Assembly (NCBI GenBank): GCA_002269645.1
Contig: NIVC01001530.1
Location: 124,001 to 188,000 of the forward strand
DNA length: 64,000 nucleotides
Origin: Macrostomum lignano
Taxonomy: Eukaryota
Direction of reading: 5' to 3'
The notes under the pieces are model-generated. The model was not told the DNA's origin, ran no database searches, and saw only the letters and a list, made by a program, of their open reading frames with translations. Shown here piece after piece: positions 1-63,732 of the stretch (position 1 is its first letter; each line of letters starts with the position of its first letter). Position numbers and translations under genes: made by a program.

Positions 1-4074
<4,074 letters not shown>

Positions 4075-8000: not shown

Positions 8001-11000
8001 CACCGCTGGCTCCATCGCTGCTGCGCCAGCTAAAGGCAATGATAATTGTCAATGTGATGCGACTGGTAAGAACTCGGATGCGCCTAGCCTGCCGGGTGAT
8101 TGTGCCTGCCATACTACTGATAGTGCTGATAATCACAGCCGCAATCGAACGGTCTAACAATAATCATCGCATCCATCTGCGCAATAACATGACTAATGAA
8201 GGCGAAATAATCAAGCACGGCGTCTGCGTCTTTGAAAAGGTAGAAGGCAAGCCGCGTATGCTATGGGAGGTTGATAAGAGGCGTTGCAGTTGGTTGTACG
8301 CTGGTAAGACTGCGCCCATGGAGATAGCTAAAAACTACCTGGCTTTACAGAAGCCGAAAGAAGTTGAGCTGCAAAATTTTCTGCGAGAGAAATCCAATAT
8401 TGAGAAAATCCAAAAGGTGTGCAAATCCCGCAAGCCGGATGCGGAACCGTGTCCGATAACTTACACCATAGATTGGGGTGACAACACGCCCAATTCCGAG
8501 CGAGTTATCTATTATGGGACGTATGATATTTATGAAAATTTTAACTCGTCAAAATCGGCGTCCTTAACGATTGGAACATATATGAGGGCCACGTCTTACT
8601 TTACAACAGTAGCGCGTTCCGATGAACCTCCTGACGATAAAAAGTTTTTATTTTCTGCTGAGAGCGTCTACGACTTTCGCACCACCTTTGTACCGGCATT
8701 TGGAGCCTTCTTCCAGATACTGATCATGTCGCTGATACCAGCCACTTTCCTCGACGACATCATTGAAGACAAGGAGACTCAAGTTCGCTATCAGCTTTCT
8801 ACAATAGGCATGAGCAACTTCAGCTACTGGCTCACTAACTTTATCATTCATTGGGTTCAGTACGCCACTGTGTACTCTTTGAGCACACTATTGCTGCTAT
8901 CCATCGTGCAAACTGGCTATTCTAGTTCATTCTTCATGACTGGCGTATTCTTGCCTATACTGCTGCTAGGCTTGCCAAGCAATCAGCTCATGACTTACGT
9001 GCTTAGCACTATTCTAGACAGGGCCAATCATCTTGTGACCATAATGTATTTATTCACCTCAATATTACTGGCATTTATTGTGCTACTCGTGCAACTCAAC
9101 AATGTGGCATCAATAATACTCATTTCTGTTCTGCCGCCATTCGCTCCAATAGCCCTGACTTTCTACGGCGTGAAGACAATATTCTATTCTCTGTCATACT
9201 ACAATAAAGACAGCATCTCAGACATCACCGAACTAAAGGGCAGCTTGTTTTTCTCGCAGCCACACGTGGTAGCAGCGTTCATAGCAATTATCATTCACTT
9301 TGCTGTGCTGCTGACAGCGCTGGCTATCATTGAGAACAAGATAATTCTGCTTCAACTGTTGGAGACTCGGTTGCAGGTAAGAGTTATGTGGAGGAAAACC
9401 ACTTAGTAATGCTTATTGTTGAATCTACAGAATTTTAAAAAATATAGCAGAAGTATAAATTACAACTAATAACAAGTCTAACTTCTGTCTAATCTATTCG
9501 AACCATTAATCAGCCACATCTAACGATATAAAAATGGAAGATTCCAAAAGTGACATTTGATTTCGCGATAGGCCAGGGCCTAGGACATGTTTCTGAGTTC
9601 TTCACTAATGTCAACTGACCTTAACAGCCTCACCTGTGGAGACACAGTAGACAGTTCTATTTACATGTAACTATCATTGGACATGCAACCATTTTGTTCG
9701 CAAAAGAGATTCACTTTATGTTATTTAATTCAGTAGGCCTTCTACTAATCCACCAACAGATTAAATGCACCTCTGAACTGCCAGTCGGGACATTCGACAA
9801 CCTTACTGAGGATCCCGGAGTCAAAGAGGAAACAGAACGAATCGACGCGAATCCAAACAGCGAGATGAACCTCCTGGAGGTGAGCCACCTGGCCAAGACT
9901 TATCCAAACGGTACCAAAGTGGTTCGCGATATCAGCTTCGCCACCGGACCGGCGGAAATCTTTGGCATTTTGGGACCAAACGGTGCCGGCAAGACAACGG
10001 CACTGAGTACCATTGTTGGTCGGTTAAATGCAACCAGAGGTCGGTGCGAAGTGCGCCGGCAGGACGAATGGCTGCCGAGCGGATTGGCCACTAGTCGAGG
10101 CGCAATCGGCTACTGTCCGCAATCCGATCCCTTGTACGGCTGCATCACGGCGATGGAGCATATGAAATTCTACGCCAACATCATCGGCGTGCCAGATAGC
10201 AAATTGGATTCTCTCATTGAAGAACTAGCCGACAGTCTGGACCTGAATCTCGACAGAGAGAGTTTAGCCGAGCATCTGTCTGTCGGCGTTCGTCGACGCT
10301 TGTCGTTGGCTATCTCGCTACTCAGCGAGCCCTCTGTGCTAGTCATTGACGAAGCCACGACAGGCGTCGATCCCGAGGGTAAACGATTTCTTTGGCAGGC
10401 GATTCGGGCTGCGGCGACCCTCACCTGCACAGTGCTTGTCACTACGCACAGCATGGAAGAGGTCGAAGCGATCTGCAACCGGGTTACTATCATCAATCGA
10501 GGCTTGCTGGTTGGTTTGGGCACCGTGCAACAGCTAAAGAGTTTGTAAGTATTCGCTTCTACCAGTTATATAAGCTTTTAGCCTAGCGCGGATTGTAGCC
10601 TAGTGTTTAAGAGTGTCGGACTCACGACTGAAAGGTCGGGGGTTCGAGTGTCGACCCACTCAGAACAATTGTCCTTGAGCAAGACTTAACTCTGCAATTC
10701 TTCAGTTCACCCAGCTGTAAAATGGGTGCCAGCATTAGCTGGGGTAACTGAGGGTGTGTGTGGCGACCCCCCAGTCATTGGACTGAACAGCCCTACGCAG
10801 CCTACAGATGCACCGAGCATTAGCTGCGGCTGAGCTGTCGGTTGCACATCTGGCCCAATCTGGGCAGGTGTAATCAATTATTACTTCTTATTATATTATC
10901 ATTATAAGCTTTTAAAAATACCAGTAAATGATACTTAGTGTTGTCTGGGGAAGAGAAGAAGTTGCTCGCCTTGGAATCGTTGCGCAAATCGCGCCCATGA

Positions 11001-25311: not shown

Positions 25312-26073
25312 TCAATACGGACTGCCATGATTAGAACGCTGATGCCGGTACAGATGACCCGACTGAGAGAAAGCCTTACCGCACACAATACACTTAAACG
25401 GCTTGTCGCCATTGTGTATTCTCTGGTGACTAGCCAGCGAAAATGCTCTACTGAATCTAGCTCCGCAGATTTCGCAGGCAAAAGGCCTATCGCCCGTGTG
25501 CATCCGTTGATGATCAGTGAGGCTGCCAGATTGGGTGAATCGCATGCCGCACAGGCGGCACTCAAAAGGTCGTTCACCTGTGTGAGTGCGCAGGTGCCTG
25601 CCAAGGCTGGACGTCTCCGGGAAGGCTTTGCCGCAGAATCTGCACAGATGTCGCCGCTCATTGTCGTGCACAGCTCGACTGTGTACGCGGAGGTAGCCGG
25701 GCCGGGAGAAGGTTTTGTTGCACTGGGTGCATTGGAACGGCTTCTCCCCGGTGTGAATGCTTAGGTGAGCCATCAGGTGACTTCGCTGGGACAAACGCTT
25801 GCCGCAGAAGTCGCATTGAAAGCACTTGCCAGATACTCTGGAACTGTCTGGCTGGTCTGAGTCACCAGCTGCAGCTGGGGCCTGCTCAAGACAGTCCCCA
25901 GCCGCATCCTGGTGGTCCGGTTTAATTTGTTGATCCTCATTTAGCAGCAATTGCTGTTCAGTTTCAAGCTTAACAATCGTTGGTTTTTGATCTCCGATCT
26001 GTGCGGGCTTAACGTCGTCAGGTGAAGAGGAGTCGGGGATTGTGGAAGTCAGATTTATTTGAGGAAGCTCCAT
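25312..26073 (-). CDS. Intronless C2H2 zinc-finger protein, 253 aa, six tandem fingers
   Basis: Six CxxC-x12-HxxxH/HxxxxH units with TGEKPF/TGERPF/TGDRPF linkers and an acidic N-terminus. Confidence 0.92.
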
Positions 26074-26419
26074 TTAAGTGCTGAAGCATTTTGGGAGGAA
26101 AATTAAGATTTATTTTTAGGCAAATAACATACTACTTACTGGCTCATAATATACCTACCATAGCAACTGGAGCATCATAGCAACCAGGTTAGCTAACTAC
26201 TATAGCAATCAGGATGCCAACTGTTATGCTAAAGTTTCATGGAATTATTTTCCTGAAATTTCAATTAATAAATATTTAGACGCCTGCAGACAGAGAAAGT
26301 CTTTATAAGTGCCCATCGGTCATCATGGCAAAAATATATATTTCAAAAAACTCTGTTCCACAAGAATAAATTCACTAAATATAATGCTAACGTGTCACTT
26401 TAGAAGTTATTATTACAAT

Positions 26420-26625
26420 GGGAGACAGGGAGTCCTAGACACACTAGCATCTGGAGTGAGGAGACAGGGAGTCCTAGACACTAATATCTGGAGTGAGGAG
26501 ACAGGAAGTCCTAGACACACTAGCATCTGGAGTGAGGAGACAGGGAGTCCTATACACTAATATATGGAGTGAGAAGACAGGAGTCCAGGACACACTGATA
26601 ACTGGAGTGGAAGACAGGGGTCCTT
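26420..26625. repeat. Short array (about 5 units) of the 37-40 bp CTGGAGTGAGGAGACAGGGAGTCC minisatellite
   Basis: Same unit as the long array at 29548-31030. Confidence 0.9.
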
Positions 26626-27141
26626 GACCTTGATATAGTAAAACAGAACTTTGACAAGCTACAGTTTCAAAAAAGTACTGACAGTCAGTAGACTGCCTTT
26701 GTATATTTGTTTATAAATCTTTAAAGTTGCACATGCAGAGGAATAAAATAATAAATTAGCTTCATAGTAAAAGCAAAATACGCTCGTAATTCGAAGCATG
26801 AAGACTACACAATTATTTGTATTACATAATAATACAGATTACTAAAGGAACTACTATTTATACGAAAGCTTACAAAAAGTATCAGAACTTATATGTAAAT
26901 ACTGTTACATCGCAGTATTACCTACTAAAATGTGATAGCAAATGATGTACTTTAGAAAAGACGAGCTCGCACGTAGAAACTACAGAGGCGTAGCATTAGT
27001 CAGACATTGATCTCGTATCAAGTTAAGAATCTTTCAAGAACTACTCAAAGCACACTATGCTTTGACCAAGCCCTTTTCGCCTTTGTGTACGCTCAATTGA
27101 TTTGATAAGTTACCATTGTAGTGAACTTCTCGCTGCACACC

Positions 27142-27636
27142 TTAACATTGGTAAGGCATTTTATCTGTGTGCCGTTTTACATGATAAGAGAGACTATCTG
27201 AACGATGGAACTTTTTGCCGCACACCTGGCATTCGTAAGGCCTTTCACCTGTGTGCAGGCGTATATGAAGGGTGAGAGAATTTAAATCAATGAACTTCTT
27301 GCCGCACACCTGACATGGGTAAGGTTTTTCACCTGTGTGCACTCTTGCATGACGAGAGAGAATATCTGCACGACTGAACGTCTTGCTGCACACCTGGCAC
27401 TGAAAAGGCTCTTTACCTGTGTGCAGCCTTAAATGACGGGGTACAGAAGTTGGATCCTTGAACTTCTTGCCGCACAACTGGCACTCGTAAGACTTCCGTC
27501 CGGTAGGTCGAACTGACTCAGACTCCGAGTCGCAGTCCACGGAGTGAGACTGCACGTGACGCAGGTACAGCGCTGCAGATGCACGCGATTGGGAGAAGCT
27601 CTTCGAACAGAACAGACAGGAATGCAGACAGCTCAT
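27142..27636 (-). CDS. C2H2 zinc-finger protein, 164 aa (one atypical + four canonical fingers)
   Basis: CLFC...HVQSH followed by four fingers with TGKEPF/TGEKPY/TGERPY linkers; ends in MPYQC*. Confidence 0.88.
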   Translation of the reverse strand: MSCLHSCLFCSKSFSQSRASAALYLRHVQSHSVDCDSESESVRPTGRKSYECQLCGKKFKDPTSVPRHLRLHTGKEPFQCQVCSKTFSRADILSRHARVHTGEKPYPCQVCGKKFIDLNSLTLHIRLHTGERPYECQVCGKKFHRSDSLSYHVKRHTDKMPYQC

Positions 27637-28897
27637 GTTTGTCGTGCCTCTTCGATTGTGAATTGTTTGCTACTGAAATCGGTGAAGGGAAACAGAGTTA
27701 ATTAAAACGACGAGTGCTAATTTCAGGATGCGCAAACGACTTGAATTTTAAAGAAGGAAGAAAGGCACTAACTATATCAACGGGAGTATCGTAGCAACCA
27801 GCTACCTACCATAGCAACGGGAGTATCATAGCAACCAGGTTAGCTACGCTCGTACCTACCGTAGCAACTGGAGTGACCATAAAAAGCGTAGGGAAACTAC
27901 CAAAACAATTAATTTTTTGTAGCGATAACTATAAATCGCCGATAATACTTGTAAATGAAATCACTACTGTCAATAGACAATGCAAGAAAATCGTTGCACT
28001 ATAGAAAACCGCAGAAAACTGTGTATTTATAATTAGGAACACAATCGCCACATCAATCAAACCACATGAATGTGAAGATTTACGAGTAAAAGTATTTTTA
28101 ACACAAGTCAAGAAAATTTACAGTCACAGTCGTATCTACATTGAACATAAGTTAGTTCAGTGGAAATTTTAAACACAAAATTACAAGCTGACTAAAAAAT
28201 AAAAAACATGCACACAAATGATTTTATTTTTTGTTTGATATTTAAAAGTTATGCCACTGATGTCAACTACAATGCTAAGGTTTCATGGAATCATTATTCT
28301 GAAATTTCTATTCATATATATATATATGATTCATAAAAGATACATTTTTTTAAAAGACTCAAATGTTTCCAAAGAATATTTTCACTCAATATTACATAAA
28401 AGAGTTACTTTTGAACTGGACAAGCGTGGTACCTCGCGGGTAGGCTACTGGTTTCTATTGCTAAGGATTTTACTAGTGAATTTACTTCCTACTGGTTTGA
28501 GATTTTTTTAGTTCGCTGCCACCAGGTTCCTGCTATTCCCTAATTCTGGCTTTAGATTTAAAGAATTGAGTCAGGACACCAATGAAGTAATTTCAACAGT
28601 TTTAATTAAAGTTTAAAAAGGAATAAAACGTTAACGTACAAAAGGTTGCTTTACATTATTTCCCTATTCCTATTCCCGCTATAGTGCTATTGGGCAAGAC
28701 TCCCAGTTATAGATTTTAGAGGCAAGACTCCTCTTGTGCAAGCCTAAATTATATTCCTTCTTTTACCTCCCCTTCTTACCACTTTGCGTTGCCTTTGATT
28801 TGCGTTGCCAAGAACCAAAGCTTTTTTCCTGCAGCGCATTAATAATAAAAAAGTCAATTTCAAAGAAAATATAGCGAGCTCACAAATACGAGCTACA

Positions 28898-29488
28898 TCA
28901 ATAATAAGGCATCCAGCTGCTTTCGTCAGCTGGCCTCAGACTACCAGTGCACAGTAGAATGATGTCCACAATCCACCAGATGCCGAAGCCGCCAAGGCAC
29001 AGCATCTTGCCAATAGCGGCGCCAGTGTGTCCCAGACAGAATCTGTCTATGGCTAGGAAGCCTAGGAACACCGAGTACAACAGAGTGGTGAGGAAATAGT
29101 GCCCGCTGTACTTTAAACAGGGCGCCCGGCCGCGCAGGAAGGTCCTATTGCCGTAGCATTCGATGTCTTGCAAAGCGAAGCACTGCAGTTTAGTGTGCTC
29201 AACTTTGTGATAACTTTGACCGCCCCATTTAGTGCAGCCGTGACCTAGAGAGTCTTTCAGGCTGACATTGCCTTTTAGGTCTAGCGGCGGGTTGCACTTT
29301 ACTAGATCTGGCGGCAGCAAACGACAGGGCAGCAGGGGACCCTCGGGATAGTAGACATCGCCAGTAGATTCGTTATACACCTGCGATTGATAATTCAATC
29401 CAGCTCGATCAACAATTGGCAGCTCTTCAGCCTCACAATGCCTGCTGCTTAATAGCAGCGATAGAGTCAGTAGTGCGACTGGACAATG
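28898..29488 (-). CDS. TM2D2: TM2 domain-containing protein 2; single coding exon lacking a genomic start codon
   Basis: GCTKWGGQSY...EHTKLQCFAL..IEC...RTFLR...PCLKYSGHYFLTTLLYSVFLGFLAIDRFCLGHTGAAIGKMLCLGGFGIWWIVDIILL is the TM2D2-type C-terminus. The frame is open upstream through a signal-like HCPVALLTLSLLLSSRHCEA to the acceptor TCCCGCAG at 29489. Confidence 0.88.
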   Translation of the reverse strand, partial: HCPVALLTLSLLLSSRHCEAEELPIVDRAGLNYQSQVYNESTGDVYYPEGPLLPCRLLPPDLVKCNPPLDLKGNVSLKDSLGHGCTKWGGQSYHKVEHTKLQCFALQDIECYGNRTFLRGRAPCLKYSGHYFLTTLLYSVFLGFLAIDRFCLGHTGAAIGKMLCLGGFGIWWIVDIILLCTGSLRPADESSWMPYY

Positions 29489-29547
29489 CTGCGGGATTCA
29501 ATATGGGTTCAGTTACCTCAATTCACCAAATAGTCAAAAGAGTACAG

Positions 29548-31030
29548 CTGGAGTGAGAAGACAGGGAGTCCTACTATACACTAATATCTGGAGTGAGAAG
29601 ACAGGGAGTCCTACTATACACTAATATCTGGAGTGAGAAGACAGGGAGTCCTACTATACACTAATATCTGGAGTGAGAAGACAGGGAGTCCTACTATACA
29701 CTAATATCTGGAGTGAGAAGACAGGGAGTCCTACTATACACTAATATCTGGAGTGAGAAGACAGGGAGTCCTACTATACACTAATATCTGGAGTGAGAAG
29801 ACAGGGAGTCCTACTATACACTAATATCTGGAGTGAGAAGACAGGGAGTCCTACTATACACTAATATCTGGAGTGAGAAGACAGGGAGTCCTACTATACA
29901 CTAATATCTGGAGTGAGAAGACAGGGAGTCCTACTATACACTAATATCTGGAGTGAGAAGACAGGGAGTCCTACTCGACACTAATATCTGGAGTGAGAAG
30001 ACAGGGAGTCCTACTAGACACTAATATCTGGAGTGAGAAGACAGGGAGTCCTACTCGACACTAATATCTGGAGTGAGAAGACAGGGAGTCCTACTAGACA
30101 CTAATATCTGGAGTGAGAAGACAGGGAGTCCTACTAGACACTAATATCTGGAGTGAGAAGACAGGGAGTCCTACTCGATACTAATATCTGGAGTGAGAAG
30201 ACAGGGAGTCCTACTAGACACTAATATCTGGAGTGAGAAGACAGGGAGTCCTATTCGACACTAATATCTGGAGTGAGAAGACAGGGAGTCCTACTCGACA
30301 CTAATATCTGGAGTGAGAAGACAGGGAGTCCTACTCGACACTAATATCTGGAGTGAGAAGACAGGGAGTCCTATTCGACACTAATATCTGGAGTGAGAAG
30401 ACAGGGAGTCCTATTCGACACTAATATCTGGAGTGAGAAGACAGGGAGTCCTAGACACACTAACATCTGGAGTGAGGAGACAGGGAGTCATAGACACTAA
30501 CATCTGGAGTGAGGAGACAGGGAGTCATAGACACTAATATCTGGAGTGAGGAGACAGGGAGTCCTAGACACACTAGCATCTGGACTGAGGAGACAGGGAG
30601 TCCTAGACACACTAGCATCTGGAGTGAGGAGACAGGGAGTCATAGACACTAACATCTGGAGTGAGGAGACAGGGAGTCATAGACACTAATATCTGGAGTG
30701 AGGAGACAGGGAGTCCTAGACACACTAGCATCTGGACTGAGGAGACAGGGAGTCCTAGACACACTAGCATCTGGAGTGAGGAGACAGGGAGTCCTAGACA
30801 CACTAGCATCTGGAGTGAGGAGACAGGGAGTCCTAAACACACTAGCATCTGGAGTGAGGAGACAGGGAGTCCTAGACACACTAGCATCTGGAGTGAGGAG
30901 ACAGGGAGTCCTAAAAACACTAGCATCTGGAGTGAGGAGACAGGGAGTCCTAGACACACTAACATCTGGAGTGAGGAGACAGGGAGTCCTAGACACACTA
31001 AAATCTGGAGTGAGGAGACAGGGAGTCCTA
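29548..31030. repeat. Bipartite minisatellite: about 22 x 40-bp units then about 15 x 37/39-bp units
   Basis: CTGGAGTGAGAAGACAGGGAGTCCTACTATACACTAATAT, switching near 30440 to CTGGAGTGAGGAGACAGGGAGTCCTAGACACACTAGCAT. Confidence 0.96.
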
Positions 31031-31698
31031 GACCCTGACAATGGAAAACAGAACTTCATAATCTACGGTTTCGTAAACAGTACTGACAGTCAGTGAAATG
31101 CCTTAGTATTGTATATTAGTTTAATTTTTTAAAGATTTTACATGCACAAGAAAAAACTGGTTCGTATTAAAAGCAAAAAAATTAAAAGTAGTAAGACAGC
31201 GCCATATTTCAAAACAACGAATGTGACAGTCGATTTACAAGGATTGAGAAGACAGGGAGTCCTAGATCCTTCTCACTCCAAAGATTATTTGAACGTGATT
31301 CCCCGAACCTAAATTAAAAAAAATAATCGAACTAATTTTGAAATAATGAATCATAAATCGATAGAAAAACAGATAACAAAAATAACGTTTCATGCAAAAA
31401 GCTTGCAAAAGCATCATGCGCATACTGTTACATTGTAGTGTTACCTATTGTAAATGTAATACTAAATGATGTAAATTAGAATAAACGAGCTTGCACAGAT
31501 AAAATAGGAAGCCAGAGAAATATTCAGACAAAAAGAAATTAAACATGAAATGCACACAAACTTGAGAATCTTTTTAAACTTCTGCATTGCACACTGCAAG
31601 CACACTGCAAAGCGCACTGCATAGGCCAAGCCTTTTCGCCTTTATGCACGCTCGATTGTTTCGATAAGTTACCGATCGTGGTGACCTTGCTGCAAGCC

Positions 31699-32028
31699 TT
31701 AACATTGGTAAGGCATGCCACCTGTGTGCCGTCTTACATGGTAAGAGAGACTATTTGAATGACTGAACGTCTTGCCGCACACCTGGCACTGAAAAGACTC
31801 TTTACCTGTGTGCAGCCTTAAATGACGGGGTACAGAAGTTGGATCCTTGAACTTCTTGCCGCACACCTGGCACTCGTAAGACTTCCGTCCGGCAGGAGTT
31901 CGAACTGACTCAGGCTCAGAGTCGCAGTCCACGGAGTGAGACTGCACGTGACGCAGGTACAGCGCCTGAGATGCACGCGATTGGGAGAAGCTCTTCGAAC
32001 AGACCGGACAGGAATGCAGACAGCTCAT
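31699..32028 (-). CDS. C2H2 zinc-finger protein, 109 aa; paralog of 27142-27636 with two fewer fingers
   Basis: Near-identical N-terminus (MSCLHSC...HVQSH) and C-terminus (MPYQC*). Could also be a decaying duplicate. Confidence 0.8.
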   Translation of the reverse strand: MSCLHSCPVCSKSFSQSRASQALYLRHVQSHSVDCDSEPESVRTPAGRKSYECQVCGKKFKDPTSVPRHLRLHTGKESFQCQVCGKTFSHSNSLSYHVRRHTGGMPYQC

Positions 32029-32554
32029 GTTGATGTGCCTTTTCGATTGTGAATTGTTTGTTACTAAAATCGGTGAGGGGAAACTTAACGGTGAATGTTC
32101 ATTTCACGAGGCACAAACGAATTGTATTTTAATGCAAATGAGTTTTATAAATTATCAAAGAAAAAACGGAAGTATTGTTTATGTAAACGCGAAATGCATA
32201 AGCCGCTCTCGGGAATCAGTTTATTTGAAGAAAAAAAAGATTTCAGCGCAACAAACTGACAAATATGCAACAACCCGGATGCACTGTACTTTTACAATTT
32301 GAGAGTTAGCGCACTAAATTGACATGACCTTAATTGTTCTGGTCTGAATTTGAAATATGCTATTAGAGTGGGTAAAAAATTAAGCTTAACGAGTTTAAAC
32401 TTTATATTAAGGATAGGCAAATAGATTAATAAATGTGATCACACTTCTGATCCGTAATGTGAGGGCGGGCTAATATGTACTATAGCACTATGTTCTACTG
32501 TTAAACGACACAGTAAAATAAGAAAGTACAAAAGTTACAGCACAATTTTTGAAC

Positions 32555-34267
32555 TCATAGTTCGCCGCAATCCTCAACAACCACTGGTTGACTAGGCTTC
32601 CCAGATTTGGACCCCATGGATTCCATTTTTCTTACAACTGGCATGCCTTCAACCACCCGGCCAAACACTACGTGCTTATTATCCAGCCAGACCGTGGCTT
32701 CAGTGCAGATGAAGAACTGCGAGCCGTTAGTGTTTGGGCCGCTATTGGCCATAGACAGCACGCCAGGGCCGGTGTGTCTGAGCGTGAAATTCTCGTCTGG
32801 AAACTTCTCCCCGTAGATGGACTTGCCGCCAGTGCCGTTGCCTTTAGTGAAGTCGCCGCCCTGGCACATGAAGCCGGGTATGATTCGATGAAACTTCGAG
32901 CCCCTGAACCCGAATCCGCGCTCGTGGCTGCACAGACAGCGGAAATTCTCGGCGGTCTTTGGCACAACGTCGTTGCGCAATTCGGCAACGATTCTACCTG
33001 CCGATCGGCCGCCAATGCTGATGTCCAGGTAAACCCGAGGATTTCCACCGCCTGTCTTTGAACGCTTAGCGGCTGGCTGGCTGTCTGTAGAAGCGGCGGC
33101 TGCTTCTGCTGGCTTTTCTGAAGATACTTCTGCTGCCGCTGCGGAGCCGCCCCCGTTGCCATCGGCAGCCTCGCCGTCTGGCCGATTCTGCAGAGTGGCG
33201 CCGCCGAATTTCTTCAACCAGTTGTCGTCTGACCAGACTGGCCGGCCCCAGCCTTCGCGAATGCGCACCGGCCTGCGAGGGGTGAGGGGTTTGGTGATGA
33301 TGGCCTCACCCTGTTAATCCTTATTAGTCTAGAAAGGTCGCCACTAAGCATCTCGAAGGCTGGCCTAGCAACTGACGATTTGGGATGCTGGCCCAGCAAC
33401 TGAGGATCTGGGAGGCTGGCCCAGCAACTGACGATTTGGGATGCTGGCCCAGCAACTGACGATTTGGGATGCTGGCTCAGCAACTGACGATTTGGGATGC
33501 TGGCTCAGCAACTGACGATTTGGGATGCTGGCTCAGCAACTGACGATTTGGGATGCTGGCTCAGCAACTGACGATTTGGGATGCTGGCCCAGCAGCTGAG
33601 AATCTGGGAGGCTGGCCCAGCAACTGACGATTTGGGATGCTGGCTCAGCAACTGACGATTTGGGATGCTGGCTCAGCAACTGACGATTTGGGATGCTGGC
33701 CCTGCAACTGAGAATCTGGGGGGCTGGCCCAGCAACTGAGAATCTGGGGGGCTGGCCCAGCAACTGAGGATCTGGGGGGCTGGCCCAGCAACTGAGAATC
33801 TGGGGGGCTGGCCCAGCAACTGAGGATCTGTGAAGCTGGCCCAGCAACTGAGGATCTGGGAGGCTGGCCCAGCAACTGAGGAACTGGGAGGCTGGCCCAG
33901 CAACTGACACTCTGGGAAGCTGGCCCACCAACTGAGGAACTGGGAGGCTGTGCACCTGTCTAATCCCACAGACGCACCTGGCAATATTGACGCGCAGAGT
34001 GCGGCCGTAGAGCTCTCCCTCGTTCATATTATCGATAGCGGCGGCGGCATCCTCGGCAGATTCGAATTCAACGAAAGCGAAGCCGCGGTGCTTGCTAGAC
34101 TGGTAGTCCAGCGGGATAGAAATGTCCACAATGTCACCAAACGGAATGAAGGCGGCGTGTAAAACTTTCTGATCAACTTCGTCGGCTAAGCCGCCAATGT
34201 AAACAATGCGCTTATTGAGCGGATTGTAGGAGCCCTTGGGCATCTGGAATTCCGGCATGCTGGCCAT
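32555..34267 (-). CDS. PPIE: Peptidyl-prolyl cis-trans isomerase E (cyclophilin-33; RRM + cyclophilin), 335 aa; exons 34267-33978, 33272-32555
   Basis: RRM ([14 protein letters not shown]), linker PVWSDDNWL, and cyclophilin domain ([40 protein letters not shown]). The phase-2 GT-AG intron gives 1008 nt. Confidence 0.96.
33357..33950. repeat. 28/29-bp minisatellite (GCTGGCCCAGCAACTGA[CG/GG]AT[T/C]TGGGA[T/G]) in the PPIE intron
   Basis: About 21 tandem units; same family as 40825-41015. Confidence 0.95.
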
Positions 34268-34409
34268 AGCTGCCGCTCTGCAGGTTTGCTTGCACTTTTA
34301 ATTTGTTTGTTTTAATGCGGACCAAAGCAGAGTTTTGCTGGCTGAAACATGGTGAGATATAAGTGAAAATTAATGCGAATAGAATTTCATTTTTATAGAG
34401 ACACATTTA

Positions 34410-34760
34410 AATAACGGCTGCTCCAAAGACACACCCGAAGATGACTCTAGAGACACATCAAAAGACTACTCTAGAGACACTTCTAAATAAAGGCGACTCT
34501 AGAGAAACATCTAAAGGCGGATCTAGAGACATATCTAAATAAAGGCGATTCTAGAAACATCAAAAGGCGGATCTAGAGACACATCTAAATCAAAGCGATT
34601 TTAGACACATCTAAAGACTATTCTAGAGACATCTAAATCCGGTTCTAGAGAGACACCTAAAAACAATCCTAGAGACAAATCTAGAGGTGGCTGTAAAAAA
34701 TATTTAAATGACGGCTGCTCTAGAGACACATCTAACGACGATATCAGACACATTTTCTAG
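34410..34760. repeat. Degenerate repeat rich in TCTAGAGACACATCTAAA, upstream of PPIE
   Basis: About 12 diverged copies. Confidence 0.75.
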
Positions 34761-36048
34761 AAAAATCATTTGGTGAACAGACAAAGCTGAGAAACATTTT
34801 GTAGGGCTGAAATCAGGAGAAAAAGGCAAATAATTTTTAACAATATATAACTGAAAATAAAAGTCACAAACAGTTATGAAACGCTAGCTATAACTGAGCG
34901 TTTCATAATCTAAATGTATAATATATTCAATAATATATATTTATTTTTACGCATATACGACCGTACTTAAGCGCAAATTTTGAGTGCAGTGCATTTACTA
35001 AATAATCATTTTCTTTCAATTTGAAATAATTGATCTGGATTGGAGTGAAAGTTCTTCCCGAAAAACATTGCACAGAAATAAATTATTGAACAAGAAAAAC
35101 CGGACTATAGTACTACTAGTAGCAACGCAAGTAGAGCAGGATAAAATTACTTATTTCATAGTATAAGAGGTGGAATATTATGGAATAAACAACATCCTCT
35201 ATAAAACTACCTATGAACAAAGTAGAGAATGATCTAACTATTTAAATATTAAAATACATTGAATGTGCATTTATACTACTAACTGATGCGTCATTGACAG
35301 TAATAAAATACACGGCATGAGAAAAACATTAGTGCAAACTGAGAGAGTTCATAAATTATTAATTATTATCTAATACTGCGTCATAATTACACAACAGGAA
35401 AGCGACAACAATTAACTAATTATCGTATTTTATTAGATAATTCAACTCAATACAAAGTTGCTTACGCAACATATCGGCAAGTTGAAACGGGCGCTTCCAC
35501 ATTAGTAAATTAAATAAGCAGCTTTAATTATATACGTTGTTTATACTCGTACTATAATATAGCAGTAGCTAGTAAAGTAATAATTAAATTATAATCGAAA
35601 TAATTTATTATGCTTGTGAGGTGGATTTAGTGGGAAGAAAAATTAATTTATTCACATTATTTGTTATTGTTATAGTAATAATTGCAGATATAAATTACCC
35701 ATATGAGGCATATTTGTTATAATCAAATAATATGTACTGTCAATGAGATTTCTCTGTTGATTGTTGCACAGAAAAAAATGTTTAAGAGAACAACATCAAG
35801 ACAACACTCTACATATAGCAATACGATTGTGATATATTACAGTGATATTACAGACTGATAATCTACAATGACAACAATTTTTTTTCAAAAAGCAGAGAAT
35901 AATTTAGCGAATAATTTTTTTCTTTTAATAAAGGAATTCAAAACAGGAAAAAATACGAATTAGAAATATTAGTGAATGCCCACAATTTAATAATTGAATT
36001 GTTAATAACAATATCCAAATCACAGTATTGGTTACAGATGTGATACCA

Positions 36049-37200
36049 AATGATCGGGATCAATAATCTATTCACTCAGGGACTAATGATCAGGATCAAT
36101 AATCTATTCACTCAGGGACTAATGATCGGGATCAATAATCTATTCACTCAGGGACCAATGATCGGATCAATAATCTATTCACTCAGGGACCAATGATCGG
36201 GATCAATAATCTATTCACTCAGGGACCAATGATCGGGATCAATAATCTATTCACCCAGGGACCAATGATCCGGATCAATAATCTATTCACTCAGGGACTA
36301 ATGATCGGGATCAATAATCTATTCACTCAGGGACTAATGATCGGGATCAATAATCTATTCACTCAGGGACTAATGATCGGGATCAATAATCTATTCACTC
36401 AGGGACTAATGATCGGGATCAATAATCTATTCACTCAGGGACTAATGATCGGGATCAATAATCTATTCACTCAGGGACCAATGATCGGGATCAATAATCT
36501 ATTCACTCAGGGACCAATGATCGGGATCAATAATCTATTCACTCAGGGACCAATGATCGGGATCAATAATCTATTCACCCAGGGACCAATGATCCGGATC
36601 AATAATCTATTCACTCAGGGACTAATGATCGGGATCAATAATCTATTCACTCAGGGACTAATGATCGGGATCAATAATCTATTCACTCAGGGACTAATGA
36701 TCGGGATCAATAATCTATTCACTCAGGGACTAATGATCGGGATCAATAATCTATTCACTCAGGGACTAATGATCGGGATCAATAATCTATTCACTCAGGG
36801 ACCAATGATCGGGATCAATAATCTATTCACTCAGGGACCAATGATCGGGATCAATAATCTATTCACTCAAGGACCAATGATCGGGATCAATAATCTATTC
36901 ACTCAGGGACCAATGATCGGGATCAATAATCTATTCACTCAGGGACCAATGATCCGGATCAATAATCTATTCACTCAGGGACTAATGATCGGGATCATGA
37001 TTAATTCACTCAGGGACCAATGATCGGGATCATGATTAATTCACTCAGGGACCAATGATCGGGATCAATAATCTATTCACTCAGGGACCAATGATCGGGA
37101 TCAATAATCTATTCACTCAAGGACCAATGATCGGGATCAATAATCTATTCACTCAAGGACCAATGATCGGGATCAATAATCTATTCACTCAGTGACCAAT
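36049..37200. repeat. 36-bp minisatellite (AATGATCGGGATCAATAATCTATTCACTCAGGGAC[C/T]), about 32 copies, between WDFY3 and PPIE
   Basis: Tandem units without spacers; the 12-aa-repeat ORF 36193-37023 is a by-product. Confidence 0.96.
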
Positions 37201-37356
37201 GAATGACTCATACAGCAAACAATTGAAATACTTTATATTCTGAACAAAAACTGTTTGCACAAAGATAAAATTCGTAACCATTCATTGATCAGTAGTGGAT
37301 ATCGGACATGCATGTGCAAATGAATCAAATTGGTAGGAAAATATTTTGCCAAACGG

Positions 37357-63732
<26,376 letters not shown>

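What the first reader, a model, noticed from the sequence alone, without database searches (positions are those of the whole stretch)
28898..29500. TM2D2 has no genomic start codon: candidate gene initiated by the AUG of a trans-spliced leader
Seen: the TM2D2 frame is open up to a TGA at 29498-29500, and the first ATG inside it lies deep in the TM2 domain (GKM). A signal-peptide-like stretch, HCPVALLTLSLLLSSRHCEA, begins exactly at the acceptor GAATCCCGCAG|CAT (29489/29488), in phase 0. Upstream lie a 1.5-kb minisatellite and the 3' flank of another gene, with no obvious coding exon. Established: flatworm spliced leaders end in AUG, which can act as the initiator Met. Inference: SL addition would give M-HCPVALLTL..., a complete 197-aa TM2D2 whose translation and ER targeting depend on trans-splicing.
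Basis: partly seen in the sequence, partly recalled or inferred. Interest (0 to 1): 0.75.

Follow-up and report, generated by a model that had tools for sequence, protein, structure and literature searches.

The report
Flatworm TM2D2 gene borrowing its start codon
This Macrostomum lignano gene for a small membrane protein (TM2D2) has no start codon of its own and almost certainly gets it from the AUG at the end of the spliced leader RNA, a mechanism already known in flatworms, so it is a clean new example and not a new kind of thing.

Summary
On the minus strand an intronless TM2D2 ORF runs from 29488 to 28898. An in-frame TGA lies at 29500-29498, and the first in-frame genomic ATG comes 160 codons in, inside the TM2 domain. 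The window is Macrostomum lignano (assembly Mlig_3_7). Its single 35-nt spliced leader (SL) ends in ATG.

Two near-identical paralog copies are annotated in GenBank as "partial" 196-aa proteins. That annotation cuts transcripts at peaks of SL-containing reads. Adding the SL at this site gives a 197-aa ORF that starts at mRNA nucleotide 33 with a normal signal peptide.

The three copies differ at 7 synonymous sites and 1 conservative site, so the gene is under selection and is neither a pseudogene nor an assembly error. Orthologs show that only the Met is missing.

One complication: the window's own copy is annotated from a second acceptor 10 nt downstream (CAG|TC, exon start 29478). There the SL AUG is out of frame and reads MSHY-stop. 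I saw no RNA reads directly.

SL-AUG initiation has been established in flatworms since Cheng et al. 2006. This is therefore a new member of a known kind. Its practical value is for annotation: such "partial" M. lignano proteins are really complete.

The parts
28898..29488 (-). Single-exon TM2D2 coding region: 196 genomic codons (HCPV...MPYY) plus the TGA stop. It lacks an initiator ATG.
   Evidence: Translation. Pfam TM2 match. TM2D2 orthologs. The annotated CDS of the paralogs starts at the equivalent base.
29489..29495 (-). Acceptor A, CCCGCAG|. It is the SL trans-splice acceptor in phase 0 with the ORF. Adding the SL gives ...UUGCAUG|CAU UGU... = M-H-C-P-V...
   Evidence: Identical in all three copies. 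It is the boundary of the annotated partial CDS in L002 and L003. It ends in the CAG of the M. lignano trans-acceptor motif [T/C]TNCAG.
29479..29485 (-). Acceptor B, TGTCCAG|TC, 10 nt downstream and in phase 1. It is the 5' boundary implied by the window copy's own 192-aa annotation. Here SL addition gives AUG UCG CAC UAC UGA (MSHY-stop).
   Evidence: P0001 starts at ALLTL. The gene is at locus 10001-10579, which is window 29476-28898. The upstream context is CATTGTCCAGTC. The SL+B ORF was computed.
29498..29500 (-). In-frame TGA that closes the frame 3 codons upstream of acceptor A. It lies in the outron and is removed by trans-splicing.
   Evidence: Conserved in all three copies.
29429..29488 (-). 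Signal-peptide coding stretch HCPVALLTLSLLLSSRHCEA. The h-region is VALLTLSLL, with small residues at -3 and -1 (C-E-A) before EELP.
   Evidence: Best 9-residue Kyte-Doolittle mean is 2.61, against 2.28-2.86 for ortholog signal peptides. It aligns with the N-terminal hydrophobic stretch of orthologs. Codons 4 and 14 vary only synonymously among the copies.
28958..29104 (-). TM2 domain: two transmembrane helices with the DRF motif.
   Evidence: Pfam PF05154, residues 129-177, E = 1.2e-13. Invariant D148 R149 and G/W columns.
29003..29005 (-). First genomic in-frame ATG (GKM). It falls inside the TM2 domain and is Leu in all 11 aligned orthologs, so it is not a plausible start.
29548..31030 (-). 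40-bp minisatellite (about 37 units) in the presumed outron or intergenic region. On the gene's strand each unit reads CTCCCTGTCTTCTCACTCCAG, a pyrimidine tract followed by a match to [T/C]TNCAG.
   Evidence: Motif from PMC8629364. Present in all three copies with 26-35 strict-pattern matches.
31539..32061 (-). Upstream same-strand C2H2 zinc-finger gene. After subtracting repeats, the gap to TM2D2 is about 570 nt, below the 1-kb operon threshold used for M. lignano.
   Evidence: Operon criterion in PMC8629364.

Best explanation
The locus is the Macrostomum lignano ortholog of TM2D2 (amaretto/CG11103), an intronless gene that has lost, or never had, a genomic initiator codon. Its pre-mRNA is transcribed from upstream, possibly as a polycistron with the zinc-finger gene and through the minisatellite. 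It is then trans-spliced to the 35-nt spliced leader at CCCGCAG|CAT, so the exon starts at 29488. The SL's 3'-terminal AUG joins in frame. The mature mRNA has a 32-nt leader and a 197-aa ORF, M-HCPVALLTLSLLLSSRHCEA|EELP..., whose first 21 residues form the ER signal peptide. Translation and membrane targeting therefore depend on trans-splicing at this site. A second acceptor 10 nt downstream (CAG|TC, exon start 29478) is probably also used. It gives an mRNA in which the SL AUG opens only a 4-codon ORF, so that mRNA is probably unproductive. Shown here: the anatomy, the organism, the annotated 5' ends, selection on the ORF, and completeness against orthologs. Inferred: that SL reads define those 5' ends. 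Not shown: use of the SL AUG by ribosomes, and the ratio of the two acceptors.
For: The organism is M. lignano, and its SL ends in ATG (PMC8629364). GenBank proteins PAA53593.1 and PAA64155.1 ('partial', 196 aa) start with the codon right after CCCGCAG in two paralog loci. The annotation pipeline sets 5' ends from SL-containing reads (PMC5730564). In L001-L003, 6 of 8 annotated non-ATG CDS starts lie 0 or 2 nt after a YAG. These 8 starts come from only 3 gene families, so they are not independent. Adding the SL to exon A gives a 197-aa ORF from mRNA nt 33, and the next AUG is 130 nt further on and out of frame. Across the three copies, 8 variable codons split into 7 synonymous and 1 M/V change, with synonymous changes at signal-peptide codons 4 and 14. 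TGA, acceptor and the absence of an ATG are identical in all three copies. The N-terminal length before the conserved ESTG..Y.P motif is 40 residues, against 38-50 in orthologs, so only the Met is missing. SL AUG use as initiator Met is established in flatworms: Cheng et al. 2006 J Biol Chem 281:733, as cited in PMC9851317, PMC12582326, PMC3510090 and PMC5832876. The M. cliftonense/M. hystrix annotators deliberately left the SL's ATG untrimmed, describing it as the translation start codon (PMC10468722).
Against: I saw no RNA read, cDNA or ribosome footprint. The trans-splice site is inferred from how the GenBank CDS boundaries were made. The window's own copy is annotated from 29476, implying a 5' end at 29478 after CAG|TC, where the SL AUG is out of frame. 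Its local sequence is identical to L002, which is annotated at site A, so I cannot say which site dominates. Acceptor A (CCGCAG) matches the [T/C]TNCAG motif only partly and has a weak pyrimidine tract. No SL-bearing TM2D2 product such as MHCPV... exists in the protein collection, including its Logan assemblies.
Confidence: 0.8

Rival explanations
1. Translation starts at a near-cognate codon, not the SL AUG. This would happen on mRNA trans-spliced at acceptor B (29478) or on unspliced RNA. In the B-spliced mRNA the TM2D2 frame stays open back through the SL (...UUG CAU GUC GCA CUA CUG...). The SL's UUG, or the in-frame CUG codons at 29470 and 29458, could then initiate.
For: The window copy's own annotation implies acceptor B. 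In-frame CTG codons lie at 29470 and 29458, and an ATC lies at 29497. SL+B has no in-frame AUG for the long ORF. Non-AUG initiation from SL sequences has been reported in nematodes and other taxa (PMC9851317).
Against: In the B-spliced mRNA a perfect AUG lies 4 nt after the UUG and would capture most ribosomes for MSHY-stop. A CUG start at 29470 leaves a weak h-region (best 9-mer hydropathy 1.56, against 2.61 with the SL AUG), and a start at 29458 leaves none. Two of the three copies are annotated at the in-frame acceptor A. Codon 4 (GTC/GTG), which lies upstream of the CUGs, varies only synonymously (a single site).
Confidence: 0.08
2. Position 29488 is an ordinary cis-splice acceptor, and an unannotated upstream exon supplies the ATG. 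The exon would lie in the minisatellite (ATG CTA|GTGTGT units) or at 31423-31277 (donor GTGAGA).
For: A mechanical scan finds 155 ATG-to-GT phase-0 combinations in the 2.6 kb upstream. One of them is a 49-codon ORF ending at a GT[GA]AG-type donor at 31276.
Against: No such exon is annotated in any of the three copies, since CDS span equals CDS length. The best candidate carries a 1-nt insertion in L002, and its donor segment is missing in L003, while the TM2D2 CDS stays under selection. Minisatellite length differs among the copies: 26-35 strict-pattern unit matches, spanning about 1.4-2.0 kb. Orthologs have no N-terminal extension, and the signal peptide must be N-terminal. The GenBank CDS is flagged partial.
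Confidence: 0.05
3. The gene is a dead or dying copy (a pseudogene that lost its ATG), or the missing ATG is an assembly error.
For: There is no start codon, no intron, and repeats surround the gene.
Against: Three independently assembled copies share the same start region. The intact 196-codon ORF shows 7 synonymous and 1 conservative differences; at roughly 25% synonymous sites under neutrality, the chance of 7 or more synonymous out of 8 is about 4e-4 (my calculation). All family-invariant residues are present. No other TM2D2 copy from this species appears in the protein search, where the next hit is 59% identical and comes from a nemertean.
Confidence: 0.03

Closest known systems
Flatworm mRNAs that use the spliced leader's 3'-terminal AUG as initiator methionine (Cheng, Cohen, Ndegwa & Davis 2006, J Biol Chem 281:733, for Schistosoma mansoni; also reported for Echinococcus granulosus, Taenia and planarians). 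These are called 'slORFs' in PMC9851317.
   Same: The SL ends in AUG. The acceptor is in phase 0 with a conserved ORF that has no usable genomic AUG. The N-terminus matches orthologs only if the SL Met is counted. This is the criterion used for E. granulosus, where 4 of 8 listed cDNAs need the SL AUG (PMC3510090), and for S. mansoni, where more than 40 cDNAs do (PMC9851317).
   Different: The species is a free-living macrostomorph, and I found no published list of SL-AUG-dependent genes for it. The SL Met here also starts a signal peptide, so ER targeting depends on trans-splicing too. A second, out-of-frame acceptor lies 10 nt away. Use of the AUG is not shown experimentally here.
TM2D2 (TM2 domain-containing protein 2; Drosophila amaretto/CG11103; BBP-like protein 1).
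   Same: 51-54% identity to the 11 orthologs aligned from several animal phyla (the search list reports up to 64% local identity). It has the Pfam TM2 domain, the DRF motif, conserved extracellular cysteines, an N-terminal signal peptide, and the C-terminal PAD.S.W.PY motif.
   Different: The gene is intronless with no genomic ATG. In S. mansoni the ortholog has its own ATG behind a 40-50-nt non-SL 5' UTR, and it is the first cistron of a bicistronic RNA. The missing ATG is therefore not a general flatworm trait.
Ordinary SL trans-spliced M. lignano genes with their own ATG, such as the neighbouring zinc-finger gene at 32061-31539.
   Same: Same strand and same cluster. The annotated 5'-partial CDS starts 2 nt after a TTTTAG acceptor.
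   Different: There the SL AUG is followed at once by UAA, and the real ATG lies 11 codons downstream at 32028. In TM2D2 there is no downstream ATG to fall back on.

Membership tests
SL-AUG-initiated flatworm mRNAs (Cheng et al. 2006 type) | The organism has an SL RNA whose leader exon ends in AUG. | tested here: met
   The window is M. lignano Mlig_3_7. The published 35-nt SL ends ...TTGCATG (PMC8629364). The SL gene itself is not in the window.
SL-AUG-initiated flatworm mRNAs (Cheng et al. 2006 type) | The mRNA is SL trans-spliced at an acceptor just upstream of the ORF. | tested here: inconclusive
   The evidence is indirect. Annotated 5'-partial CDSs begin right after CAG in all three copies, and the pipeline sets such ends from SL reads. 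No reads were available to me.
SL-AUG-initiated flatworm mRNAs (Cheng et al. 2006 type) | The acceptor is in phase, so the SL AUG reads straight into the conserved ORF. | tested here: met
   Acceptor A (exon start 29488) is in phase 0 and gives a 197-aa ORF, and L002 and L003 are annotated there. Caveat: the window copy is annotated at acceptor B, in phase 1, which gives MSHY-stop.
SL-AUG-initiated flatworm mRNAs (Cheng et al. 2006 type) | No genomic in-frame AUG can give an N-terminus matching orthologs. | tested here: met
   The first in-frame ATG is codon 161, inside the TM2 domain, and is Leu in all aligned orthologs. An in-frame TGA lies 3 codons upstream of the acceptor.
SL-AUG-initiated flatworm mRNAs (Cheng et al. 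2006 type) | Ribosomes actually initiate at the SL AUG. | not testable with these tools
   This needs ribosome profiling, a reporter, or in vitro translation.
TM2D2 orthologs | TM2 domain with two transmembrane helices and the DRF motif. | tested here: met
   PF05154, E = 1.2e-13, residues 129-177. D148, R149 and F are in invariant or near-invariant columns.
TM2D2 orthologs | Best matches are TM2D2 rather than TM2D1 or TM2D3, over the full length including the Cys-rich ectodomain. | tested here: met
   Named hits are TM2D2, amaretto or CG11103, with E down to 3e-69 and 76-98% query coverage for most listed hits. Conserved cysteines are C55, C65, C85, C103, C111 and C124. I ran no explicit comparison with TM2D1 or TM2D3.
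M. lignano operon genes (Ustyantsev & Berezikov 2021 criterion) | Same-strand neighbour, both genes trans-spliced, and a repeat-adjusted intergenic distance under 1 kb. | tested here: inconclusive
   The zinc-finger CDS ends at 31539 and the acceptor is at 29488, a gap of 2050 nt. Subtracting the 1483-nt minisatellite leaves about 570 nt. The neighbour's poly(A) site and co-transcription are unknown.

The most novel reading that the evidence does not exclude
The two CAG acceptors 10 nt apart act as a translational switch. Trans-splicing at 29488 gives a translatable, ER-targeted TM2D2 mRNA. Trans-splicing at 29478 gives an mRNA whose only leader AUG opens MSHY-stop. TM2D2 output would then be set by acceptor choice, not by transcription. 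The roughly 37 tandem copies of a pyrimidine tract plus CTCCAG acceptor-like motif in the outron might add decoy or enhancer sites that tune this choice.
Probability: 0.1. Interest if true: 0.55.

Novelty: new member of a known kind. Interest (0 to 1): 0.3.

Why it matters
It gives a clean, conserved-gene example in a free-living, genetically tractable flatworm where the initiator Met and the start of a signal peptide come from the spliced leader. That makes M. lignano, which has transgenesis, a convenient system for testing SL-AUG initiation in vivo.

There is also a practical point. GenBank labels these proteins "partial" because the SL was trimmed before ORF calling. Many "partial" M. lignano proteins that start right after an AG are probably complete once the SL Met is added. 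This affects signal-peptide and secretome predictions and ortholog tables. It does not change what is known about trans-splicing.

Tried and rejected
- **SL in the window.** I searched for the SL 3' half with up to 2 mismatches and found no SL gene or retroposed SL. Rfam at gathering thresholds found nothing in the window.
- **Transcript-derived proteins carrying the SL Met.** The protein collection holds only the two genomic annotations, P0001 and P0121. Nothing else exceeds 64% identity, so no assembled SL-bearing cDNA was available.
- **Literature on this gene.** I searched the supplements of PMC5816591, PMC5730564 and PMC5173321 for Mlig007310 or TM2D2 and found nothing relevant. PMC8629364 has no held supplement. 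No paper mentions Mlig007310. Cheng et al. 2006 and Wasik et al. 2015 are not held, so I cite them through other papers.
- **More gene calls in the window.** Look-ups with two long window ORFs returned nothing on record.
- **Conservation in other flatworms.** I tested whether the missing ATG is shared. It is not: S. mansoni TM2D2 has its own ATG and a non-SL 5' UTR.
- **Synteny.** I tested whether the downstream 253-aa gene is the PAXIP1_C gene that follows TM2D2 in trematodes. It is not; it is another C2H2 zinc-finger gene.
- **Bacterial promoter and terminator scan.** Run once. It is irrelevant for this eukaryote and I ignored it.
- **Retrogene origin from an SL-bearing mRNA.** Considered and rejected, because the genomic sequence upstream of 29488 does not resemble the SL.

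Full report
**1. What is in the sequence**

On the minus strand, window 29500-28898 translates as *IPQHCPVALLTLSLLLSSRHCEAEELPIVDRAGLNYQSQVYNESTGDVYYPEG...GKMLCLGGFGIWWIVDIILLCTGSLRPADESSWMPYY*.
- The frame is closed by TGA at 29500-29498.
- The only in-frame ATGs are at 29005 and 28912.
- No ATG occurs in any frame between 29488 and 29358.
- Residues 129-177 match Pfam TM2 (PF05154, E = 1.2e-13).
- The whole protein matches TM2D2/amaretto/CG11103 orthologs from many animal phyla, with E values down to 3e-69.
- Two AG dinucleotides follow the TGA before the hydrophobic stretch. CCCGCAG|CAT gives an exon start at 29488 in phase 0. TGTCCAG|TC gives an exon start at 29478 in phase 1.
- Upstream lies a 40-bp minisatellite at 29548-31030 with 37.7 copies. 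Beyond it is a same-strand C2H2 zinc-finger gene.

**2. Where the window comes from**

The exact-sequence look-up places the ORF on NIVC01001530.1 of GCA_002269645.1, the Macrostomum lignano Mlig_3_7 assembly. Window base 1 corresponds to contig base 124001. The 90%-identity cluster holds one other sequence: PAA53593.1/PAA64155.1, [quoted passage not shown], 196 aa, starting HCPVALLTL. It is encoded on two other contigs, fetched as L002 and L003.

M. lignano has one SL, CGGTCTCTTACTGCGAAGACTCAATTTATTGCATG. About 30% of its genes are trans-spliced to it, and the top acceptor motif is [T/C]TNCAG (PMC8629364).

**3. Evidence that 29488 is an mRNA 5' end created by trans-splicing**

The Mlig_3_7 annotation was built as follows. 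SL-containing reads were extracted, trimmed of the SL and mapped. Transcriptional units were then cut at the resulting peaks with the TBONE pipeline, and ORFs were called with TransDecoder on the SL-less transcripts (PMC5730564).

On such a transcript, an ORF that is open to the first base is reported as 5'-partial and starts within 0-2 nt of the transcript's end.
- In L002 and L003 the annotated CDS starts at the CAT immediately after TGAATCCCGCAG. A transcript that reached even 3 nt further upstream would have added a Gln codon. One that reached the TGA would not have been called partial. So the annotated mRNA begins at the base equivalent to 29488.
- The rule holds for neighbours. Of 8 annotated non-ATG CDS starts in L001-L003, 6 lie 0 or 2 nt after a YAG. 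These 8 come from only 3 gene families, so they are not independent.
- I did not see the reads themselves. This step is an inference from the method plus the coordinates.

**4. What trans-splicing at that site produces**

Joining the SL to exon A gives an mRNA whose first AUG, at nt 33-35, opens a 197-aa ORF, MHCPVALLTLSLLLSSRHCEAEELP... The next AUG is 130 nt further on, out of frame, and opens 18 codons.

The N-terminus has a short n-region, a hydrophobic core VALLTLSLL, and C-E-A before EELP. The core's best 9-mer Kyte-Doolittle mean is 2.61, against 2.28-2.86 for the four orthologs scored.

In the alignment with 11 orthologs, the M. lignano protein lines up from its first residue with the orthologs' initiator Met. 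It has 40 residues before the conserved ESTG..Y.P motif, against 38-50 in the orthologs scored. Only the Met is missing from the genome. The lone internal Met (GKM) is Leu in all aligned orthologs.

**5. The gene is functional**

The three copies are identical from 18 nt upstream of the acceptor to 10 nt (L003) or 46 nt (L002) downstream of it. All keep the TGA, the CAG|CAT and the absence of an ATG, so the missing ATG is not an assembly error.

Across the 196 codons there are 8 variable codons. Seven are synonymous, including codon 4 (GTC/GTG) and codon 14 (AGC/AGT) in the signal peptide. One is M/V. With roughly a quarter of random changes synonymous, 7 or more of 8 has a probability of about 4e-4 (my calculation). 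The numbers are small, but they point clearly to purifying selection.

**6. Rival explanations**

- **Cis-spliced upstream ATG exon.** A mechanical scan finds many chance ATG...|GT phase-0 combinations. None is annotated, since CDS span equals CDS length. The best candidate (ATG at 31423, donor GTGAGA at 31276) has a 1-nt insertion in L002 and has lost its donor segment in L003. The minisatellite differs in length among the copies. An N-terminal extension would also bury the signal peptide and has no counterpart in orthologs.
- **Near-cognate initiation.** In-frame CUG codons lie at 29470 and 29458. They leave a weak or absent hydrophobic core.
- **Pseudogene.** Contradicted by section 5.

**7.

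The window's own copy is annotated as a 192-aa partial protein starting ALLTL, with its CDS from 29476. The 12 nt upstream read CATTGTCCAGTC. That implies a transcript 5' end at 29478, right after a second CAG.
- With that acceptor the SL AUG reads AUG UCG CAC UAC UGA, and no in-frame AUG serves the long ORF.
- The window and L002 are identical from 18 nt upstream to 46 nt downstream of acceptor A, yet they are annotated at different acceptors.
- The simplest reading is that both acceptors are used and peak-calling picked one per copy. I cannot measure the ratio.
- In the B-spliced mRNA the TM2D2 frame stays open back through the SL (...UUG CAU GUC GCA...). A low level of UUG initiation cannot be excluded, but this is my inference only.

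**8. Comparison with what is known**

That the flatworm SL's 3'-terminal AUG can serve as initiator Met was shown by Cheng et al. 2006 (J Biol Chem 281:733). That paper is not held here, so I cite it through others.
- In S. mansoni the SL AUG is in frame in 28% of trans-spliced transcripts, and more than 40 cDNAs need it (PMC9851317).
- In E. granulosus, 143 of 187 SL-bearing clusters are full length when the SL ATG is used, and 4 of 8 listed cDNAs need it (PMC3510090).
- All reported parasitic-flatworm SLs end in ATG (PMC12582326).
- The annotators of M. cliftonense and M. hystrix left the SL's ATG untrimmed and labelled it the translation start codon (PMC10468722).

The mechanism is therefore established. 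What is new is the gene, the species-level example, and the fact that the SL Met also begins a signal peptide. I found no M. lignano paper that lists SL-AUG-dependent genes or names this gene.

The trait is not shared by S. mansoni. Its TM2D2 RNA contigs carry a 40-50-nt non-SL 5' UTR and their own ATG.

**9. Verdict**

The main open points are direct read evidence and the relative use of the two acceptors. Novelty is "new member of a known kind". Interest is modest at 0.3, mainly as an annotation lesson and as a handy test case in a transgenesis-capable flatworm.

Noticed in passing
window 29476-29485 (minus strand): The window copy's own GenBank CDS (192 aa, ALLTL...) starts 12 nt downstream of the paralogs' CDS. 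That implies a second trans-splice acceptor, CAG|TC, with the exon starting at 29478. There the SL AUG is out of frame and reads MSHY-stop.
   Followed up: partly
window 29548-31030, 26421-26628 and 31245-31262 (all minus-strand sense): The 40-bp minisatellite unit reads CTCCCTGTCTTCTCACTCCAG on the gene strand, a pyrimidine tract plus a perfect [T/C]TNCAG trans-acceptor motif. A 5.5-copy array of the same unit follows the second zinc-finger gene, and a solo unit follows the first. The unit therefore seems to belong to a tandemly duplicated module of zinc-finger gene, 3' flank and repeat. Whether any unit is used as an acceptor is unknown.
   Followed up: partly
window 32028-32065 (minus strand): The upstream zinc-finger gene is annotated as 5'-partial, starting 2 nt after TTTTAG. 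SL addition there would give AUG immediately followed by UAA, a start-stop. The real ATG is at 32028, 11 codons downstream. It makes a useful contrast to TM2D2.
   Followed up: partly
L002 5491-12043: One paralog locus has a gene model (176 aa) that joins the upstream zinc-finger gene's 5' part to the downstream zinc-finger gene's 3' part across the whole TM2D2 gene. This is either read-through or cis-splicing over TM2D2, or an artefact of multi-mapped reads between zinc-finger paralogs.
   Followed up: no
L004-L009 (Schistosoma mansoni RNA contigs) and L010 (a second RNA-seq sample, organism not given; the protein looks trematode-like): TM2D2 is followed on the same RNA contig, about 100-150 nt downstream, by a PAXIP1_C-domain (PAGR1-like) gene. 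That suggests a conserved bicistronic unit in trematodes. The arrangement is not kept in M. lignano, where the downstream genes are C2H2 zinc fingers.
   Followed up: partly
window 32555-34267 (minus strand); L003 5955-7286: An RRM plus cyclophilin gene (335 aa) spans 1713 nt here but 1332 nt in paralog L003. A 28-bp x 21 minisatellite (33359-33950) lies inside the gene span. The paralogs probably differ in copy number of an intronic repeat.
   Followed up: no
whole window, e.g. 1256-1941, 3065-3748, 36049-37202, 38775-40140, 46500-48053, 49167-50432, 54638-55535: The window is packed with more than 20 micro- and minisatellite arrays with periods of 4-53 bp, up to 1.5 kb each. These account for the strong local GC and AT skews (38-40 kb, 46-48 kb) and for the long ORFs on both strands at 13.1-13.7 kb and 15.7-16.5 kb, which are (TCTGTG)n.
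   Followed up: partly
window 25312-39476 (minus strand): All annotated genes in this stretch lie on the same strand: a BEACH/WD40 giant gene, the RRM-cyclophilin gene, a zinc-finger gene, TM2D2, and two more zinc-finger genes. This is compatible with long polycistronic transcription resolved by trans-splicing.
   Followed up: no
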